Assembly (NCBI GenBank): GCA_001938485.1
Contig: MQRK01230776.1
Location: forward strand, 10,558 to 74,557
Source: Girardia tigrina
Lineage: Eukaryota
Length of the DNA stretch: 64,000 nucleotides
Direction: 5' to 3'
Below, piece after piece: positions 20,314-58,950 of this stretch. Each line of letters begins with the position of its first letter. Within the stretch, counting starts at the first letter, position 1. Under the pieces are notes generated by a model that saw only the letters and a list, made by a program, of their open reading frames with translations, ran no database searches and was not told the DNA's origin. The position numbers were made by a program, and so were the translations under genes.

Positions 20314-20695
20314 ATGTACAATGTCTACGCTCGGTCTACGTACAAGTCATCTATTTCAAGAGATAGTAATACTGATTTAGGTACGTCTCGTAACAAAAAA
20401 GATTGTCAGCTAAGTCAAACTGAACTGATAAATCAGGAAAGAAATTGTCATTCTCCAATGAAACGATCTTCAAGATCTCCAAGACAATCTCCAAGATCAA
20501 GTAAGGGAGAAAAATTTCCCCGGTCTGTAACTCAGTATGAATTTGGGTCAACGAGTTTGAGAGAGAAACTTTATAAAGATATTGAGCATGAGAAACGTCT
20601 GAAGAAGCGTAGACTTCGTCTAATAGCTTCAACTGAAGACGCCTTCAGTAGACTTAAACGAATTACAGATTCTCAAGAAGACAAGAACTTAAATG
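20314..20695 (+). CDS. vangl: Vang-like (Van Gogh/Strabismus) protein, penultimate coding exon
   Basis: Acceptor tttag|ATG at 20313, donor GT at 20696; LYKDIEHEKRLKKRRLRLIASTEDAFSRLKRI matches Vangl [32 protein letters not shown]. Confidence 0.9.
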
Positions 20696-20744
20696 GTATC
20701 GTCTTATTTTCCAGTATATTTTAAGTAAATTAATTATTACTTAG

Positions 20745-21172
20745 ATAACTCAGTAAAAATTTTAACCAACGTCGAAGCAGCTCAAAATGTTCTCGCCCAA
20801 CTGGCTAAACCTTTTCAAAAATATCTCAGACTAGCTCGTTTGCAGCTTCAGTTTCCAAAATCACGAATACAGAACCACTTAGTAAAGTGTCTTCAGTTTG
20901 GAATGTCGGCGCAGGTTTTCCTAGAAAGTTTTATTTCAACCCCAAAAGTAATGGAGGCATCAGAATGCATAAATGGTCAGATTTGGTCAATTTACTGCAA
21001 AATAATGTTGTGTCGGGGTTTGTCAAATAAACTGACCTTTATGCTTAAGAGGGAAAATGTGTCCTTAATGTGTACGGTTTATCATATACCAATGTTCTCT
21101 TTGACTGAAGACACTTTCAAGCACGACTCTCAAAAGTTTCTCATCAAATTCAATTCGGAAACGTCTGTTTGA
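20745..21172 (+). CDS. vangl: Vang-like protein, terminal coding exon
   Basis: 49-bp GT-AG phase-1 intron (20696-20744) restores frame; EAAQNVLAQLAKPFQKYLR (cf. EAAQAIFASMARAMQKYLR) ... KFLIKFNSETSV* with PDZ-binding ETSV; upstream TM exons not found in window. Confidence 0.92.
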
Positions 21173-44559: not shown

Positions 44560-45159
44560 TTTTTTATTTTTGTTTCATGTGAGTTGTTGTTTCGGTATTT
44601 TAAAATATGATGAGCACCAAATAGTTAAAATCAGTTAGCATCTCTTTCTTCATCTTAACACTACGTCTTAACACTAGAATCACACACATAAACGGAGTAT
44701 TTGTGTCAGGGTATTCGACTCTACACTTTTGTAAATAAATTCGCAATGAATAAAATAATAAAAGATGGATTTTTGACATGATCTTTCGTAATTGTTAGGG
44801 GCCTATCACATTACCAAAAAAACGTAATATCACATCCTGGGGTCAACACATTAATACAAATTATATTCAATCATAACATTACACCATACCCATTAGAGCT
44901 GATCTGGTCTATCTGGTCTTAAACCTATGAAGGTCTTGAACCTAGAAGGTTTTCATCACCTATCACTGCTTGCAGATGATATGGGGGTTGAGAGGCAAGT
45001 TGTGGTCTCAAGTATAAGGGGTTAAGAGCTAAAATACACACGCCGAGATTACATTAATATAACAAGATCTTTTGGATTGTTACCGATAACCTAGGGGCTC
45101 AAAGCCAAATAACTCAGTTCCCAAAATAAGTTCAAATGTTTTTGAAAAACACAGAACCA

Positions 45160-45863
45160 AAACACATTGATCCTCGATAACTGTCCTGCTCATCCGATAA
45201 TCGAAGGGTTAATTAACATTACACTGTTCTTTCTACCTCAAAATACCTCGTCGCATACGCATCCTATGGATGCGGGGGTTATTCGCAACATAAAGCACCA
45301 CTACAAATTGGCTTTGGTAGGGCGGATGATTGCAGCAATCGACAACCAGGAACCCTTCCAGATCAATATTCTGCAAGCAGTACACATCCTCAAGGACTCC
45401 TGGGAAAAGGAGATGGAGAGGATCATAAAAACTGTTTCTGCCAAGTTGGATTCGATGCCATTGGTGAAGAACCTGCAGCTATGGAGCCTGGGGAAGAACA
45501 GCCCTCAGACAATATCTTTGAGTGGATGGCATCTTATTTTTGACTTGTGGATTTCAGTGAGTATGTCAATGTGGATGATGACCTTATCACCTGAAACTCG
45601 CTATCAGAGGAGGTAATTTTGACACTGGCAGGTGGAAGTGAAGAGCAGCCAAGCAGCGACGACGAAACCTTGCAGCCACCGGAAGAAATGCCACCATCTC
45701 GTATAGAAGCTCATTTTGCCTTGCAAACTCTCCAAAACTTTCTAGAAGCAAAGGATAATGACTTACCTGCTTTGCAAAGTCCACGTTAAGTGGAAAATTG
45801 TTAACTAAACTTTCTTTTACAAAGAAGCGACAAACTACCATCCCAAATATTTTTAAACAGTAA
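45160..45863 (+). mobile_element. Tigger/pogo DDE_1 transposase C-terminal remnant
   Basis: LILDNCPAHP...LFFLPQNTSS..HPMDAGVIRNIKHHYK and C-terminal KRQTTIPNIF. Confidence 0.88.
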
Positions 45864-47759: not shown

Positions 47760-48312
47760 TTGAAAGTTTAATATGAAAAAATATAAATCTAGTATTAAAA
47801 ATATGTATTTAATACAATAAATATCAAATTAACATGAAAAAAATATCTATTTAATGTGAACAATATCGATTTAATAAGAAAAATTTTATTTAATGTAAAA
47901 AATATGTATTTAATATGAAAAAAATATATATATAATACACAAATATCAATTTAATATGAAAAATATCAGTTTAACATGTAAAAATATCATTTTAATATAA
48001 AAAAATATAAATTTTTTATGAAAAAATATTAATTATATATGAAAAAATATTAATTATATATGAAAAACTATATATTTATATTAAAAATTATCAATTTAAT
48101 ATGAAAAATTATTTAATATTAAGCAATATTGATTTAATATGAAAAAATATCAATTTAATGTGAAAAAAATATGTATTTAACATGAAAGATATCGATTTAA
48201 TTTGAAAAATATCAATTTAACATGAAAAGATATCAATTTAATATGATGAAATATATATTTAATATTGCAAATTATCAATTTAATATGAAAAATTTTATTT
48301 AATATTAAAAAA
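47760..48312. repeat. AT-rich minisatellite, ~20-22-bp unit AAATATCAATTTAATATGAA
   Basis: About 25 degenerate tandem units visible. Confidence 0.85.
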
Positions 48313-48941
48313 AATATTGTAAGATGCACTGACAAGAATTATTGTGGAAATTTCATCAGTTTGATTCTTCTGTAGCGAAACTTCGCCAAATTATTAAGTG
48401 GATAATCGACGATTCCTTTCAATTTGAAACTAAATATAAATAAACATCCATTTTATTATTTTTATTCCATGATTTATGTCGTCTAAATCAGAAGAAAATA
48501 AATAAACTGCACAAGTATTTATTTAAATCAAACTCTGAATCGGTAAACAACCGATTAAAACAAATTACTTAATTATTAATCGCAATTAATAAAAATTTAT
48601 TAATAAACACTTTCTTAATCTATTTATATTTTCATTTCCATATAAGTAACAATGAAGCTTCTCCTCTTGGCGTTCCTCAAACAACAAGTCTCCAGCAATA
48701 AATTATGTAGCCTTAATTTAAAATTATATACTTTAAAATTATCAAAATATATTACAATTCATTTAAACATAAAATTTTTTATTCATCTAACACAAATTCC
48801 TTATTTATAATTTATAATTATTTTATCCAATTAAAATTAAATTAAAGAAAATTTATTATTTTTGTTTCAATTTATCAAAATTTATTTTAGTATTTATCAA
48901 CAAAAATAAAGAATACAATTATTTTGTTAAATTACGATATT

Positions 48942-50327
48942 ATGAATAGCAATATTGAAGTAAATGACGATTTTACAAATAAAAATAATAAAACCCTTGA
49001 GTCAAGTGAATTGTGTACCACAAAACGGAGAAAATTAAAACGTATTCTGCCGTCAATTAAACAAAAATGTATTGAAATGTATCAAGAAGGAAAGATGATA
49101 AAAGACATAGTTCGAGAATGTAATGTAACACTATCCGATGTGTTTTACTATGTAAAAAGGTATAATAATTCAACCTCTTCAAATGGTAAAAATGAAAATT
49201 CGAATAAAATACAAATACCTTTACGTAAAAAAGTTGTGCATTTTTCAGTAAAACAAAAAGTCATCGAAATGTATCAAGAAGGATCGAAAGTAAAAGAAAT
49301 AGCTCAAAAATGTAATGTTTCAATGGGATACGTTTCAAATATTATGAAAAAATATAATAAAAAGCTATTGATAGATTCCAATAAAAACATAGACGACAAA
49401 AATATTTCTAAAGCTAATTCATCACTCAATGATAACGAATTTTCAAATACTAATAAAAGACCTTTGAAAAGGTATAAAGTTATTTCTCCTACAAAAAAAG
49501 TGAAAATAATTGAAATATATCAAGAGCAAAAGAATCTAAAAGAAATAGCTCGAGAATGTAATGTGACACAATATTGTGTATCTTATCATGTAAAGAGGTT
49601 TAATAAAGAACTATTTGCAAAATCGAGCAGGAACAAAGAAGATGAAGATCACTCAATCCTTAACTCACCGACTGATATAAACGAATATTCGAACATTAAC
49701 CGAATGCCTCTAAAAAGACCTCACGATCATCAAGTTGTGTCTCCTTCAAAGAAACAAAAAAATTGTGAAATATATCAAGAAGAAACAAAGTTAAATGAAA
49801 AAGCTCAAGAATGTGTTGTATCAGAAGATGCAATAAATAAATATATAAAAGTACACAATGACGAATTGTTAAAAATAAATATAAATGAGGAAGATAAAGA
49901 AGAAAGATTTATTGATTCAAGAATCAAACATATGTTAAATGAACAAAAATTAAAGGACATTGAAATGTATAAAAAAGGACACAAATTGTCGGAAATATCT
50001 CTCTTTTATGATAAATTATCGAAATATGCGCAAGACGTTTTCAAGAGGTACGATACACTCGCAAAAGTCACAAAAGAAAGCAAGGAAAATGACATTTTTC
50101 CTACAGACAAAATTGATAATTTATCAACAGGAAATAAAGATAGAAGAGAAAAGTTTGATATAAGTAAAAATATAACAGAAGAAAGTATAAAACAGTTAAA
50201 GTGTATCAATTTAAATCTGTCTGGAAAGTCGGTAGATGATATTGTGAGACTGCTCAAAGAACCGAAGGAAACCATTCAAAGATGGATAAACAATAAAGAT
50301 GAGATTATCGAAAACTGTTTTTATTAA
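48942..50327 (+). CDS. Multi-HTH DNA-binding protein (about 6 Tc1/paired/psq-like HTH modules), probable domesticated transposase-derived gene
   Basis: Intact 461-aa ORF from ATG 48942; repeated KQKxIEMYQEG...KEIAxxCNVSxxxVxxxxKxY modules; final GKSVDDIVRLLKEPKETIQRWINNKDEI; no DDE domain, no TIRs seen. Confidence 0.82.
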   Translation: MNSNIEVNDDFTNKNNKTLESSELCTTKRRKLKRILPSIKQKCIEMYQEGKMIKDIVRECNVTLSDVFYYVKRYNNSTSSNGKNENSNKIQIPLRKKVVHFSVKQKVIEMYQEGSKVKEIAQKCNVSMGYVSNIMKKYNKKLLIDSNKNIDDKNISKANSSLNDNEFSNTNKRPLKRYKVISPTKKVKIIEIYQEQKNLKEIARECNVTQYCVSYHVKRFNKELFAKSSRNKEDEDHSILNSPTDINEYSNINRMPLKRPHDHQVVSPSKKQKNCEIYQEETKLNEKAQECVVSEDAINKYIKVHNDELLKININEEDKEERFIDSRIKHMLNEQKLKDIEMYKKGHKLSEISLFYDKLSKYAQDVFKRYDTLAKVTKESKENDIFPTDKIDNLSTGNKDRREKFDISKNITEESIKQLKCINLNLSGKSVDDIVRLLKEPKETIQRWINNKDEIIENCFY

Positions 50328-50434
50328 TTAAATTTAATAATATCTTGTTGTTTTATTTTTAATTTTGTAGTCAATTATTGAATTTATTTATTTATTTTTT
50401 TTAATATTTATTATTTAATTTTATTCTTTAAAAT

Positions 50435-50890
50435 TGTTGGGTATTAAATTATCTTTAATTTCAATTGTTTATTTTTTAAACACAAATCTTAAATCTTAAT
50501 CTTTAATCGTAAATCTCTATTTTTTATTCTTTAATCAATAATCTTTAATCTGAAATCTTTAATCTTGATCTGACTCCAATTAATCAGAAGGGACTTCCAA
50601 CATAAATATATGAATAATGAACACAAATTCTTTTATGAAACTTTATTTCAAATAACAAATATTGACAAGTCAAAAATAATAATAATAATTCAATTCTTGA
50701 TGACAGAACAAAACACAAAACAATATTTCGTTCCAGTTAATAGATTACAGCAAAAACTGTGAATCTCCCAAAACGATCTAAAAAATCTAATCTTTAGAAT
50801 AAACCTTTTTCTCCCATACAGGATACTTATGGTTTATCAATATTTTAAAAGAATAAAATAAAAATAAAATAAGTTTTGTATTTACGTTAC
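50435..50890 (-). mobile_element. Solo LTR family A, copy 3 (truncated)
   Basis: Starts TGTTGGGTATTAAA and is colinear with 21290-~21690. Confidence 0.8.
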
Positions 50891-51410: not shown

Positions 51411-52226
51411 CAGTGTACTCTCGATTAACCGTGCGCGGATTAACTGGTTTGCGGATTAACCGTGCCTGAAAATAAATATTTTTTAATAAAAATTTAGTTT
51501 GATTATTTTTTATATAAGACGATTTTAAGACGCATTAATGAATCGCGAATTAGTTATTTGTAGATTAGTTATTTTTTGTAATAACTATCAAAATATTTTA
51601 TTTTGTAATAACTACAAAATAACTAGCGAATTTTAAAGACGTGGATGAAGAAAATATAGAAGAATGGCTCAACCGTGATTTGAATGACCCCGGATTTCAA
51701 CGCATGGATGACCCTGAAATCGTTTCTCTTNNNNNNNNNNNNNNNNNNNNNNNNNNNNNNNNNNNNNNNNNNNNNNNNNNNNNNNNNNNNNNNNNNNNNN
51801 NNNNNNNATTAAATTGTATAGAAACACTATTAGAGTATGCTAATCAAAGGGGAACAGAATATAATAATATTATGGCTTTAAGGATATTTAGATGTGAAAT
51901 TAGAAATTCTTTAAAAAGACGTCAAAAACAAACAAAACTAATATTTTTTAATTTGTATATATATAAAACTATGTATATTTTTTTATATTTTGATGTTTTA
52001 TTGATGTTTCATTTTATGATTTATGATAAAATATTATATTTTTACTTATTTTTTTGGGTTTCTTGATAAATAATGAATATAAAAATAATGTGTTAAAAAT
52101 TTATGTTGTGTAGATGATATTGTATTCGAAAATAAAATAAAAATTTGATGATTCTGATTCATCGTGTTTCTCAATTAACCGTGTCCATCCTCCCCAGCAT
52201 TAGCCCGGATAATCGAGAGTGCACAG
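51411..52226 (+). mobile_element. Tigger/pogo internal-deletion derivative
   Basis: TIRs CAGTGTACTCTCGATTAACCG / CGGATAATCGAGAGTGCACAG; C-terminal peptide ENIEEWLNRD.NDPGFQRMDD.EIV...KQTKL. Confidence 0.85.
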
Positions 52227-57007: not shown

Positions 57008-58490
57008 TACTGGTCGTCAAAATGATTAACGCAAACAACTTTTTGGGGATAATTATTTTTCCTTTGAAATATTTTTATTCTGCCAATATAAATTATTTTC
57101 CTTATTCAAGTACTTATTATTATATTAATATTTTTTCTTTTAATTTTGATTTGTTTAAATAATATTTGAATATTTATCACTTAGGCGGTTTTTTAAAACG
57201 TCAAAATGAATAACGCAAATTTATTTATTTAATTATTTCATTGAAATTTGTTAATTTTATTAAAGTTTATATATTATTTAAGTGATACATTTTTTTATTT
57301 TTTTTTGCTAAATCGTTATGTGAGACTGGAAAAATCTAAAACGAAATCGGAAATATTTTAAATGTTACTCGACATGCTGCTCGTGGTTTATGGGTTAATA
57401 TATCAAGGTCTCATCCTAAGAAAACTGGTAGAAAAGAATTATTACAAAAAAAGACAAATTGAAGATAAAACGATGTGTTTCAAGATTAATTGATGAAAAA
57501 ACGAAAGTAAATTCCTCAAAAATTAAACAAGAATGCGAACTAAATGTATCTACGTCTGCAGTACAACATTGTATGAGAAAGATAGGTTATAGATATAAGA
57601 AGGCGAAAACACAAATTGTTTTATCTTCGATGCATAAAAGAAAGAGAATTGAATACATAACCAATTGGATTTCCAATAATCACCCATGGGAAATCACTGT
57701 ATTTTCCGAAGAAAAGAGATTCTGCCTTGATGGTCCTGATTGCTGGTACTCATATAGCATAGATTCAGTTACATTGATTAGACCTAAGAGACAATGCGGG
57801 GGTGGAAGTTTAATGTTGTGGCTGATGGTCCTCCCGAATGGATTATTATCATATAGGGTTATTGAAGGAATTTTTAAAGCTAAGAGTTACGAAGCCTTAT
57901 TATGTGAAATAATTAAGTTAAACCTAGGGTCGAATTACTATTTTCAAGAGAACAATTGTTCAATCCACAAATCAAAGGCAATTAAGTCCTTTATGTTAAA
58001 TAGTGATATAAAAGTTCTAGAATGGCCATCAAAAAGTCCCGATATTAACATTGTAGAGTACATATGGAAAATGATTTCTGATACGGTTTATGACGGCGCA
58101 TCCTTTAGAAATAAATCTGAATTACTAAGTGTCATTAATAAATGTATTTTTGATTTAAATTCATGTAAAAAGGATATAATAAAAAAGTTATATGAAACAT
58201 TTCGAAAACGTTTAGCCACCATATTTTGTAAAAACGGTGGATTGTACAATAAAATGTAGCTTATGTTAATAAAATTAGTTTGCGTTATTCATTTTGACGT
58301 TTTAAAAAATCGCCTAAGTGATAAATATTCAAATATTATTTAAACAAAGCAAAATTAAAAGAAAAAATATTAATATAATAATAAGTATTTGAATAAGGAA
58401 AATAATTTATGTTGGCAGAATAAAAATATTTCAAAGGAAAAATAATTATCACTAAAAAGTTGTTTGCGTTAATCATTTTGACGACCAGTA
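57008..58490 (+). mobile_element. Tc1-like DD34E element with 212-bp IR-DR type TIRs
   Basis: TIRs 57008-57219 / 58279-58490, each with two CGTCAAAATGA(T/A)TAACGCAAA repeats; TA flanks; transposase 57459-58259 (VFSEEKRF, FQENNCSIH, SPDINIVE, 34 spacing). Confidence 0.95.
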
Positions 58491-58950
58491 TATATAACAA
58501 GATTTATTAACACAACGATACAACTTGCATCAACAATTAAATACAATGAATTTCTTACAATTTCCATATTGCATAATTTTTGCAATCTTTTTCTTTTTTA
58601 CCTTGTATGAATATTTTGATAAATGACCTAGTATAATTAGATAAGTCCATTGTTGGTTTTTCAAGACCCATAAAATCTCTGAATTTTAATCCATCATCTG
58701 AGCAAAAATATTGTTCTCTATGTTCACTTAGCTTTCTATCTGGTATTGTTCCAACTTCTTGTAGAGCAATATTCAAAAGATCATAATTGCGATCACTAAT
58801 GTCCTTTACATGATAGCTAAATTTGCTCTTTCTAACATATACTGGATCCCTCAATTTAATCGATGTTGGATATTTGAAAAAGTTAATCTGATATCCTCTA
58901 TATGTTGTTGAATTAGAAATCCATGTTGAAGAAATTTTTTTTGGAATATC

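What the first reader, a model, noticed from the sequence alone, without database searches (positions are those of the whole stretch)
48942..50327. Intact gene made of about six tandem transposase-type HTH modules with no catalytic domain
Seen: the longest clean ORF in a window where every TE frame is broken. Modules lie at roughly aa 43-80, 107-144, 189-226, 274-311, 339-376 and 418-462 of the ORF track, separated by N/K/E-rich linkers and mostly preceded by basic motifs (KRRKLKR, PLRKK, RPLKR). Established: this module resembles the first HTH of Tc1/mariner, paired and pipsqueak/CENP-B domains. Inference: a lineage-specific DNA-binding array built by internal duplication of a transposase HTH. 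It could be a domesticated regulator or a TIR-binding transposon repressor, analogous in logic to zinc-finger arrays.
Basis: partly seen in the sequence, partly recalled or inferred. Interest (0 to 1): 0.78.

Follow-up and report, generated by a model that had tools for sequence, protein, structure and literature searches.

The report
Expanded family of tandem-HTH genes
This intact, intron-free gene encodes five transposon-type DNA-reading units plus a conserved tail. It is one of at least about 55 open, fast-diversifying copies in this animal's genome, an apparently undescribed DNA-binding family built like a zinc-finger array.

Summary
Window 48942-50327 (+) is a clean 461-codon ORF, the longest in the window. 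It has five helix-turn-helix (HTH) modules of the Tc1/Sleeping Beauty PAI type and a separate conserved C-terminal helical domain. It has no catalytic domain and no terminal repeats.

It is not a lone gene. The genome holds 87 copies of the C-terminal domain, about 55 of them in open frames of 300 aa or more. Many sit in clusters on TE-rich contigs. Module number varies from 3 to 8.

Copies share an exact 20-nt CCAAT-containing block 119-121 nt upstream of a conserved ATG. Duplicated units have no fixed ends.

Coding constraint is clear:
- Simulated neutral decay destroys the ORF by 5-10% divergence, yet the window copy differs about 30% from its nearest relative.
- dN/dS on the window copy's own branch is about 0.4.
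- Within modules the scaffold gives 0.33. Helix-3 positions that map onto Sleeping Beauty's DNA-contact residues give 1.45 (Fisher p = 2e-4).

No orthologue turned up among 1.84 billion representative proteins. The only matches are module-level hits to unnamed tandem-HTH arrays, bacterial where identifiable.

Expression could not be tested.

First-stage notes on other pieces of this genome describe similar genes.

The parts
48803..48941 (+). Conserved promoter/5'UTR block shared by the paralogues
   Evidence: blastn homology with paralogues starts at L001:1362-1375, which is window 48803-48816. The alignment of 25 upstream regions shows conserved blocks running down to the ATG.
48821..48840 (+). 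Exact 20-mer TTTTATCCAATTAAAATTAA (CCAAT-containing), 121 nt upstream of the ATG
   Evidence: There are 39 exact genomic matches. All matches I compared with gene starts lie 119-121 nt upstream of a family ATG on the same strand. With one mismatch allowed there are 292 matches, against 31 for the reversed control.
48942..50327 (+). Intronless CDS of 461 codons plus TAA
48942..49031 (+). Conserved N-terminal leader (MN..N...D.TNKNNKS.ES.EL), predicted disordered
   Evidence: Alignment A1; pLDDT about 30.
49032..49187 (+). HTH module 1 with preceding basic arm KRRKLKR (aa 31-82)
   Evidence: block pLDDT 84-86
49224..49379 (+). HTH module 2 (aa 95-146), the best Pfam stretch
   Evidence: HTH_23 at 7e-7 and PAX at 1.3e-4 on this module alone. 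The single-module model has pLDDT 87.6 and three helices.
49470..49625 (+). HTH module 3 (aa 177-228)
   Evidence: block pLDDT 81-86
49725..49880 (+). HTH module 4 (aa 262-313), the family's 'last-module' subtype; degenerate in this copy
   Evidence: The motif KY[IL]K.HN.ELL.IN is shared with the paralogues. The scaffold residues I, G and I at module offsets -1, +5 and +11 are replaced here. pLDDT is about 45-50.
49920..50075 (+). HTH module 5 (aa 327-378), a divergent subtype; kept full length here and in L014, and cut short by a deletion in most paralogues
   Evidence: Alignment A1, columns 590-640; pLDDT about 50.
50163..50324 (+). Conserved C-terminal helical domain (aa 408-461), the best-conserved part of the family
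   Evidence: It is 58-76% identical to the paralogues, against 40-53% for the whole protein. Block pLDDT is 81-92. There is a weak HTH_SB hit at E=0.0018, below the cut-off.
50328..50476 (+). 3' flank still alignable with the paralogues (probable 3'UTR), then cut off by a very high-copy repeat
   Evidence: blastn matches run to L001:2968-3035 and are visible in the downstream alignment. Repeat depth is 2.6e5-3.2e6 from 50406 onwards.

Best explanation
The ORF is a functional, intronless host gene. It is one deep-branching member of a large gene family specific to this genome or lineage, whose proteins are strings of Tc1/Sleeping Beauty PAI-type helix-turn-helix modules.

Proposed mechanism (inferred):
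- Each roughly 40-aa module folds as a three-helix HTH. Helix 3 reads a few base pairs in the major groove.
- The K/R-rich arm in front of each module contacts the backbone or minor groove and may also serve as a nuclear localisation signal.
- Disordered N/S/K/E-rich linkers of 20-45 aa let three to eight modules read a long composite site or a tandemly repeated one.
- Paralogues differ in module number and in the DNA-facing residues of helix 3, so they should differ in target.
- The shared C-terminal domain is a common anchor, oligomerisation or effector domain.
- Each copy is its own transcription unit, driven by a conserved CCAAT-containing promoter.

Shown here: the fold, the family, coding constraint, the conserved promoter block and the fast-evolving DNA-contact face.

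Inferred only: DNA binding itself, the identity of the targets (TE ends or satellites are the leading candidates) and a regulatory or repressive output.
For: Fold and class:
- Pfam HTH_23/HTH_28/PAX.
- Module profile against PDB: Cbp2 2lvs at 1.4e-8 and Sleeping Beauty PAI 2m8e at 5.9e-5 over module positions 3-47.
- The single-module model has pLDDT 87.6 and three helices. It superposes on DNA-bound Pax5, Pax6 and Prd and on resolvase HTHs, with TM 0.65-0.75 and rmsd 0.5 A.
- The whole-protein model is beads on a string with disordered linkers.

Family:
- 202 protein matches in the genome.
- 87 C-terminal domains, about 55 in open frames of 300 aa or more.
- Clusters on C219237, C217418 and C241809, in both orientations.

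Not a TE unit:
- No TIRs.
- Duplicated segments vary from 1.9 to 2.4 kb with different ends.

Constraint:
- Simulated neutral AT-biased decay leaves 2% of ORFs intact at 3% divergence and none at 10% or more. The window copy is only about 69% identical in DNA to its nearest paralogue.
- Pairwise dN/dS is 0.3-0.9.
- The window's terminal branch has dN 0.19, dS 0.48 and omega 0.41, with a range of 0.34-0.50 over 44 triplets.

Promoter: an exact 20-mer lies 119-121 nt upstream of the ATG in 39 copies.

Diversifying read-out:
- The highest-entropy module positions are 19, 20, 23, 24 and 28. They map to Sleeping Beauty residues 38, 39, 42, 43 and 47, which PMC7827188 lists as DNA contacts.
- On the literature-defined contact set omega is 1.45, against 0.33 elsewhere in the module (Fisher p = 2.4e-4).
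Against: - There is no expression evidence. No RNA run holds the locus, and the three small putative RNA runs gave nothing.
- No orthologue from another species could be examined, so conservation across species is unknown.
- dN/dS of 0.4-0.7 is only moderate constraint, and linkers are at 0.66.
- Modules 4 and 5 of this copy are degenerate.
- The family lives in TE-rich DNA, and one cluster contig carries Maverick-like ORFs.
- The NG86 estimates are rough in 25%-GC DNA, and the gene pairs are not fully independent.
Confidence: 0.6

Rival explanations
1. Dedicated transposon repressors. The arrays bind the terminal inverted repeats of resident Tc1-like elements and block the transposase. The family diversifies in an arms race, as KRAB zinc-finger proteins do with retroelements.
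For: - The modules are PAI-type, and PAI is the subdomain that reads the direct-repeat core in Sleeping Beauty TIRs.
- Tc1-type HTH_SB sequences are very abundant in this genome, with more than 4000 first-look candidates.
- The DNA-contact face evolves at or above the neutral rate while the scaffold is constrained.
- Module number varies between copies.
Against: - No binding or co-variation data exist.
- No resident Tc1 PAI close to the modules was found in about 330 kb of local sequence.
- The modules are no closer to Sleeping Beauty than to bacterial or archaeal HTHs, at about 25 bits each.
- No known repression domain is recognisable.
Confidence: 0.2
2. Cargo or accessory ORF of a mobile or virus-like element, for example a Maverick/Polinton or another large element. 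Copies would multiply because the element does, not because the host needs them.
For: - The family is multi-copy, intronless and compact, and carries its own short AT-rich promoter.
- Copies lie in TE-rich contigs in both orientations.
- C241809 carries an rve-integrase ORF and a weak Pox_A32-like ORF 3-6 kb from family genes.
Against: - There are no shared element ends, and duplication units vary in length.
- Copies are old, with dS up to about 1, yet mostly open and with omega below 1.
- The window copy is solitary, single-copy by depth and lies 28 kb from a Vangl host gene.
- No viral hallmark gene is consistently adjacent to family genes.
Confidence: 0.1
3. Satellite or structural-chromatin binders. 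The periodic arrays bind tandem repeats such as AT-rich satellites, centromeric or telomeric DNA, in the way archaeal Cbp1/Cbp2 bind CRISPR repeats. They would diversify as the satellites turn over.
For: - The best solved sequence relative is Cbp2, two linked HTHs that bind repeated DNA (PMC3597662).
- The periodic architecture with flexible linkers suits tandem targets.
- The genome is rich in very high-copy short repeats, including some right next to the gene.
Against: The argument is purely architectural and no target is known. The similarity to Cbp2 is at the generic HTH level.
Confidence: 0.1

Closest known systems
PAI subdomain of Tc1-family transposases (Sleeping Beauty, PDB 2m8e/6urs; Pfam HTH_SB, HTH_23, HTH_28)
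   Same: A three-helix HTH of the same length. The profile-to-sequence match is E=6e-5 over the whole module, including the K-x-I...G...I...V/S...V...KY pattern. Helix boundaries agree with the NMR structure.
   Different: There is no RED subdomain, DDE catalytic domain, TIRs or mobility signature. The module is repeated 3-8 times in one protein and followed by a family-specific C-terminal domain.
Tc1/mariner DNA-binding-module domestications (Pax paired domain; Drosophila CG4570, cag, toy; PMC13548663)
   Same: The DNA-binding part of a transposase-type protein is kept without the catalytic part. The genes are intact, under purifying selection and lack TIRs.
   Different: The known cases are single-copy or low-copy, conserved genes with one bipartite domain. 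This is a family of roughly 55-87 members in tandem clusters, made of arrays of the PAI half only. Orthology across species is untested.
Pipsqueak-type proteins (four tandem psq HTH repeats; from my own knowledge, not checked in a paper here)
   Same: A tandem array of transposase-related HTH motifs used as a DNA-binding domain in an animal protein.
   Different: HTH_psq is not among the listed Pfam matches. There is no BTB domain. Those genes have introns and are conserved developmental genes, not an expanded family.
Archaeal CRISPR-repeat-binding proteins Cbp1/Cbp2 (PDB 2lvs; PMC3597662, PMC10883916)
   Same: This is the best solved-structure sequence hit, at E=1.4e-8 with two stretches. They have two or three imperfect HTH repeats tethered by basic linkers and bind repeated DNA.
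   Different: They are archaeal, small proteins with 2-3 repeats, tied to CRISPR arrays. Nothing indicates common descent beyond the HTH fold.
Unnamed tandem-HTH arrays, bacterial where identifiable (e.g. Ca. Phytoplasma fraxini WP_341266836.1; metagenome proteins P0001-P0010)
   Same: They have 4-13 tandem HTH_23-like modules with very similar module wording, such as KAIEMYKSG...EIAEEL.IS. They are the best hits in 1.84 billion representatives, at 1e-46 to 1e-22.
   Different: The similarity is at module level only, with at most 175 bits over 7-9 stretches. They lack the family's leader, C-terminal domain and promoter. Some are fused to ankyrin repeats or signal peptides, and none is characterised.
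KRAB zinc-finger arrays (analogy only)
   Same: Tandem arrays of small DNA-reading modules, large clustered families, variable module number, a conserved scaffold and fast-changing contact residues.
   Different: The fold is unrelated and no KRAB-like effector is recognised. A link to TE control is unproven here.

Membership tests
Tc1/mariner (IS630-Tc1-mariner) transposon | PAI-type first HTH | tested here: met
   The module profile matches the Sleeping Beauty PAI at E=5.9e-5 over module positions 3-47. HTH_23 matches in 69 of 74 modules.
Tc1/mariner (IS630-Tc1-mariner) transposon | RED subdomain (HTH_Tnp_Tc3_2), completing a bipartite paired-like domain | tested here: not met
   It is not among the Pfam families listed for the protein or its modules. 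Only the best 25 families are shown in each output, so a very weak hit cannot be excluded.
Tc1/mariner (IS630-Tc1-mariner) transposon | DDE/D catalytic domain (DDE_3) | tested here: not met
   No DDE family appears in the Pfam scan at E up to 10. The ORF ends after the C-terminal helical domain, and the flanks hold only repeats.
Tc1/mariner (IS630-Tc1-mariner) transposon | Terminal inverted repeats with fixed element ends | tested here: not met
   Only low-complexity AT-rich inverted matches of 70-90% were found. The ends of homology between copies vary.
Domesticated transposase-derived host gene (criteria as in PMC13548663) | Intact ORF, no TE termini, purifying selection | tested here: met
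Domesticated transposase-derived host gene (criteria as in PMC13548663) | Syntenic orthologues in other species | not testable with these tools
   No related eukaryotic genomes were available. The profile search of 1.84 billion representatives found no orthologue.
Domesticated transposase-derived host gene (criteria as in PMC13548663) | Expression | tested here: inconclusive
   No RNA run holds the stretch. Three small putative RNA runs laid nothing.
Paired-box (Pax) proteins | Complete 125-aa bipartite paired domain | tested here: not met
   The PAX profile matches only positions 21-59 of 125, the N-terminal subdomain.
Pipsqueak-family HTH proteins | HTH_psq motif repeats, usually with a BTB domain | tested here: not met
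   Neither HTH_psq nor BTB is among the listed Pfam matches.
Cbp1/Cbp2 CRISPR-repeat-binding proteins | Linked imperfect HTH repeats with basic linkers | tested here: met
   2lvs matches at E=1.4e-8 with two matched stretches, and the fold match has TM 0.70.
Cbp1/Cbp2 CRISPR-repeat-binding proteins | Archaeal protein associated with CRISPR arrays | tested here: not met
   This is an animal genome; a Vangl gene lies in the same window.

The most novel reading that the evidence does not exclude
This animal lineage, probably a flatworm, has built its own programmable DNA-reader family out of a transposase part. The family is a clustered, fast-diversifying set of arrays of Tc1 PAI-type HTH modules. 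Module number and helix-3 contact residues would set the target. It would play the role that KRAB zinc-finger arrays play in vertebrates, tracking transposons or satellites, and could hold a readable modular recognition code.
Probability: 0.25. Interest if true: 0.8.

Novelty: new variant of a known kind. Interest (0 to 1): 0.6.

Why it matters
Co-option of a transposase DNA-binding domain is well known, but as single, conserved genes with one domain. Here the same building block has been multiplied twice: within the protein into 3-8 modules, and across the genome into at least about 55 open genes in clusters.

The evolutionary signature matches that of adaptive DNA-reader families. The scaffold is constrained and the DNA-contact face changes at or above the neutral rate.

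If the proteins bind DNA as predicted, this would be an independent, non-zinc-finger solution to the problem of making many new DNA specificities quickly. It would also be a candidate genome-defence or repeat-management system in an animal group with very TE-rich genomes.

The short modules, with few variable contact positions, would make a recognition code experimentally tractable.

Tried and rejected
- **Word search.** The word-based search of 5.8 billion proteins with the whole protein found nothing at E<=0.001. Low-complexity words probably dominated the candidate list.
- **ESM Atlas.** Only generic bacterial HTH clusters came back, at scores of 0.82 or below.
- **Expression.** No RNA holder was found. 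Three small putative RNA runs laid no contig. This is no evidence of silence.
- **RNA families and inverted repeats.** An Rfam scan of 46-53 kb gave nothing relevant. The inverted-repeat search gave only AT-rich chance matches.
- **Organism identity.**
  - A stop-free COI piece from a mitochondrial-like contig gave only 60-64% identity to named arthropod and mollusc COI, and 83% to an unnamed Logan protein. The species stays unidentified.
  - 'Flatworm/planarian' comes from other agents' unchecked notes. It fits the 25%-GC, 1.43-Gb, TE-rich genome.
- **Resident Tc1 PAI.** I looked for a PAI domain closer to the modules than Sleeping Beauty. About 330 kb of local sequence held only family fragments.
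- **Context of the best bacterial hits.** Cluster look-ups gave no names except a phytoplasma hypothetical protein.
- **Nested insertion idea.** I considered that the gene sits as an insertion between two halves of one pogo element (DDE_1 at 45146-45613, pogo-like tail at 51623-52063). I rejected this because the first pogo fragment has its own C-terminal tail at 45619-45789.
- **Circularity in the first dN/dS partition.** The first 'recognition' class was chosen from observed variability. I replaced it with canonical HTH positions and then with the literature-defined Sleeping Beauty contact set.
- **Literature.** Searches found no description of such a family.

Full report
**1. The observation**

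Window 48942-50327 (+) is an uninterrupted 461-codon frame. The ORF listing extends it to a TTG at 48924. The ATG at 48942 is the start that all paralogues share, with the context GATATTATGAAT and an 'MN..' N-terminus. At 478 stop-free codons it is the longest open frame in the window; the next are 359, 351 and 275.

Pfam finds HTH_23 (E=2.2e-17, four stretches), HTH_28, HTH_29, PAX (5e-7), CENP-B_N and other HTH-clan families. It finds no catalytic domain.

Five modules align in register on the motif K-x-I-E-M/I-Y-Q-E-G...E-I-A...V-S...V...Y.K.Y/F-N..L. Each is preceded by a basic stretch.

**2. Fold**

I aligned 74 modules from the window gene and its paralogues (A2).
- AlphaFold gives a confident three-helix bundle with pLDDT 87.6 and helices at 2-19, 23-29 and 34-51.
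- Foldseek places it on DNA-bound HTHs, with TM 0.65-0.75 normalised to the query and rmsd 0.5 A. These are the N-terminal subdomains of the Pax5, Pax6 and Prd paired domains, Sin/gamma-delta/Tn3 resolvase HTHs and the archaeal Cbp2. E-values are weak, as expected for a 52-residue query.
- By sequence, the module profile hits Cbp2 (2lvs, 1.4e-8, two stretches). It also hits the Sleeping Beauty PAI subdomain (2m8e, 5.9e-5) across module positions 3-47, which correspond to Sleeping Beauty residues 7-51.

The whole-protein model is beads on a string:
- Modules 1-3 and the C-terminal domain (aa 413-460) are confident.
- Linkers and the N-terminal leader are disordered.
- Modules 4 and 5 of this copy are low confidence.

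The C-terminal domain is a separate helical domain with only a sub-threshold HTH_SB hit.

**3. It is a family**

- A six-frame search of the window's own 1.43-Gb assembly returned 202 matches at 40-54% identity. Most had no internal stops.
- The C-terminal domain occurs once per gene. It gave 87 matches, with all 108 candidates scored. About 55 lie in open frames of 300 aa or more. Some are identical haplotig duplicates.
- Paralogues share the leader, a first-module type, a variable number of middle modules, a 'last-module' type, a degenerate fifth type and the C-terminal domain. The number of modules per protein varies from about 3 to 8.
- On contigs C219237, C217418 and C241809 the genes sit a few kb to tens of kb apart, in both orientations, among gypsy and other TE debris.
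- In a maximum-likelihood tree of 25 members the window copy has the longest terminal branch, at 0.77. It is solitary in its window and single-copy by contig depth.

**4. Gene or transposon?**

- Homology between copies covers about 120-350 nt upstream and 100-350 nt downstream of the CDS. For the window copy it starts at about 48803 and fades by about 50476.
- Within one cluster the duplicated segments are 1.9-2.4 kb long and have different ends.
- No TIRs or LTRs flank the gene.
- The 20-mer TTTTATCCAATTAAAATTAA has 39 exact genomic matches. Every match I compared with the gene starts lies 119-121 nt upstream of a family ATG on the same strand. The window copy (48821-48840) is one of them, although its CDS is only about 69% identical to its nearest relative.

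This is what a conserved promoter element looks like, not neutral flank.

**5. Selection**

- Simulated neutral, AT-biased substitution leaves 2% of family ORFs open at 3% divergence, 0.1% at 5% and none of 5000 at 10% or more. The many open copies at 5-50% divergence therefore require selection against stops.
- NG86 dN/dS between paralogues is 0.3-0.9.
- Triplet decomposition puts the window's own branch at dN 0.19, dS 0.48 and omega 0.41.
- Partitioned over 12 disjoint gene pairs, omega is 0.40 for the module scaffold, 0.47 for the C-terminal domain and 0.66 for linkers.

The most variable module positions are offsets 19, 20, 23, 24, 26 and 28. Using the HMM alignment to Sleeping Beauty, offsets 19, 20, 23, 24 and 28 are Sleeping Beauty residues 38, 39, 42, 43 and 47. 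All five are in the NMR-defined DNA-binding set (residues 38-43 and 47) quoted in PMC7827188.

I then used that literature-defined helix-3 set, rather than my own choice of positions:
- Omega is 1.45 on the contact set, against 0.33 for the remaining module positions.
- The odds ratio is 2.8 and Fisher p = 2.4e-4.

These are rough estimates. The method is NG86, the codons are AT-rich and the pairs share history. The pattern is still the one expected if specificity diversifies on a fixed scaffold.

**6. Relatives elsewhere**

- The word search found nothing.
- A profile of 13 family members searched against 1.84 billion representative proteins found 1135 hits, but the best scored only 175 bits spread over 7-9 module-level stretches.
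- The top hits are unnamed metagenome proteins, plus one hypothetical protein from Ca. Phytoplasma fraxini. They carry 4-13 tandem HTH_23-like modules, and some add ankyrin repeats or signal peptides.
- None has the family's leader or C-terminal domain.

So the architecture recurs outside this genome, at least in a bacterium, but no orthologue of this family is on record in that library. Literature searches found the known single-gene domestications of Tc1/mariner DNA-binding modules (PMC13548663) and the Cbp1/Cbp2 tandem-HTH repeat binders (PMC3597662, PMC10883916). They found no description of such an animal family.

**7. Organism**

The window carries the C-terminal exons of a Vangl/Strabismus gene ending in ETSV, so this is an animal. 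Other agents' notes call it a flatworm, probably a planarian. I could not confirm this. A COI fragment was only 60-64% identical to named animal COI sequences. First-stage notes on other pieces of this genome describe 'intronless genes made of tandem HTH modules'. They are probably further members of this family, but I did not check them.

**8. What could not be done**

- Expression is untested because no RNA run was available.
- No binding target can be named.

**9. Verdict**

The gene is a real, constrained, intronless gene of a large, clustered family of tandem PAI-type HTH arrays that appears undescribed.

Its picture of a single gene should be replaced by one of a gene family. Its TIR-repressor idea remains one of several untested target hypotheses.

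Noticed in passing
window 20314-21169 (+): C-terminal exons of a Vangl/Strabismus planar-polarity gene. Pfam Strabismus scores 2.6e-33 and the protein ends in the PDZ-binding motif ETSV. This is a bona fide animal host gene 28 kb upstream of the HTH gene.
   Followed up: partly
window 48462-48623 and 50406-50700: Very high-copy repeats flank the gene. Summed contig word depth is about 5e4-9e4 for the first and 2.6e5-3.2e6 for the second, against about 130 in the gene body (run X1). The downstream repeat includes a TTAATCT-like microsatellite and truncates the conserved 3' flank.
   Followed up: no
genome-wide: A one-mismatch variant of the family's promoter 20-mer, TTTTATCCAATAAAAATTAA, makes up most of the listed one-mismatch matches (292 matches in all, 39 of them exact) and lies on contigs not listed among the family hits. 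It could mark a related gene family or a repeat that carries the same promoter.
   Followed up: no
L028:4872-7736 (contig C241809): An ORF with an rve integrase core plus a PLA2-like domain sits next to an ORF with a weak Pox_A32 packaging-ATPase hit. This may be a Maverick/Polinton remnant, and it lies 3-6 kb from HTH-family genes.
   Followed up: no
L037:4603-7355 (contig C219237): A retroelement carries an aspartyl protease and an envelope-like ORF that matches Monjiviricetes_fusion glycoprotein at 1e-20, so it is an env-bearing gypsy/errantivirus-like element.
   Followed up: no
genome-wide: There are more than 4000 first-look candidates for the Sleeping-Beauty-type HTH (PF25787). Many sit in open frames of about 165 aa.
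   Followed up: no
window 57022-58500: A Tc1-like element has inverted ends of about 140-165 nt (57022-57162 and 58336-58500). Its 266-275-aa transposase remnant carries HTH_Tnp_Tc3_2 and DDE_3 but no recognisable PAI subdomain.
   Followed up: partly
window 45146-45789 and 51623-52063: Two separate pogo/Tigger-type transposase remnants flank the HTH gene region. The first has the end of DDE_1 plus an acidic tail. The second is a C-terminal tail interrupted by an N gap.
   Followed up: partly
window 48000-48300: An AT-rich minisatellite made of roughly 20-30-nt units of the form '(t)atgaaaaa(a)tat(c/t)aatt(t/a)a(a/t)' lies just upstream of the gene.
   Followed up: no
proteins P0001, P0004, P0007 (metagenome; two on one 2.66-Mb contig): These proteins, probably bacterial, combine ankyrin repeats or a signal peptide with 5-9 near-identical tandem HTH_23-like modules. 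This is an uncharacterised architecture, possibly that of effectors from intracellular bacteria.
   Followed up: partly
L041-L043 and other contigs: There are 31 COX1-like matches across many contigs, with TGA, TAA and TAG inside them. This suggests numerous nuclear copies of mitochondrial DNA.
   Followed up: no
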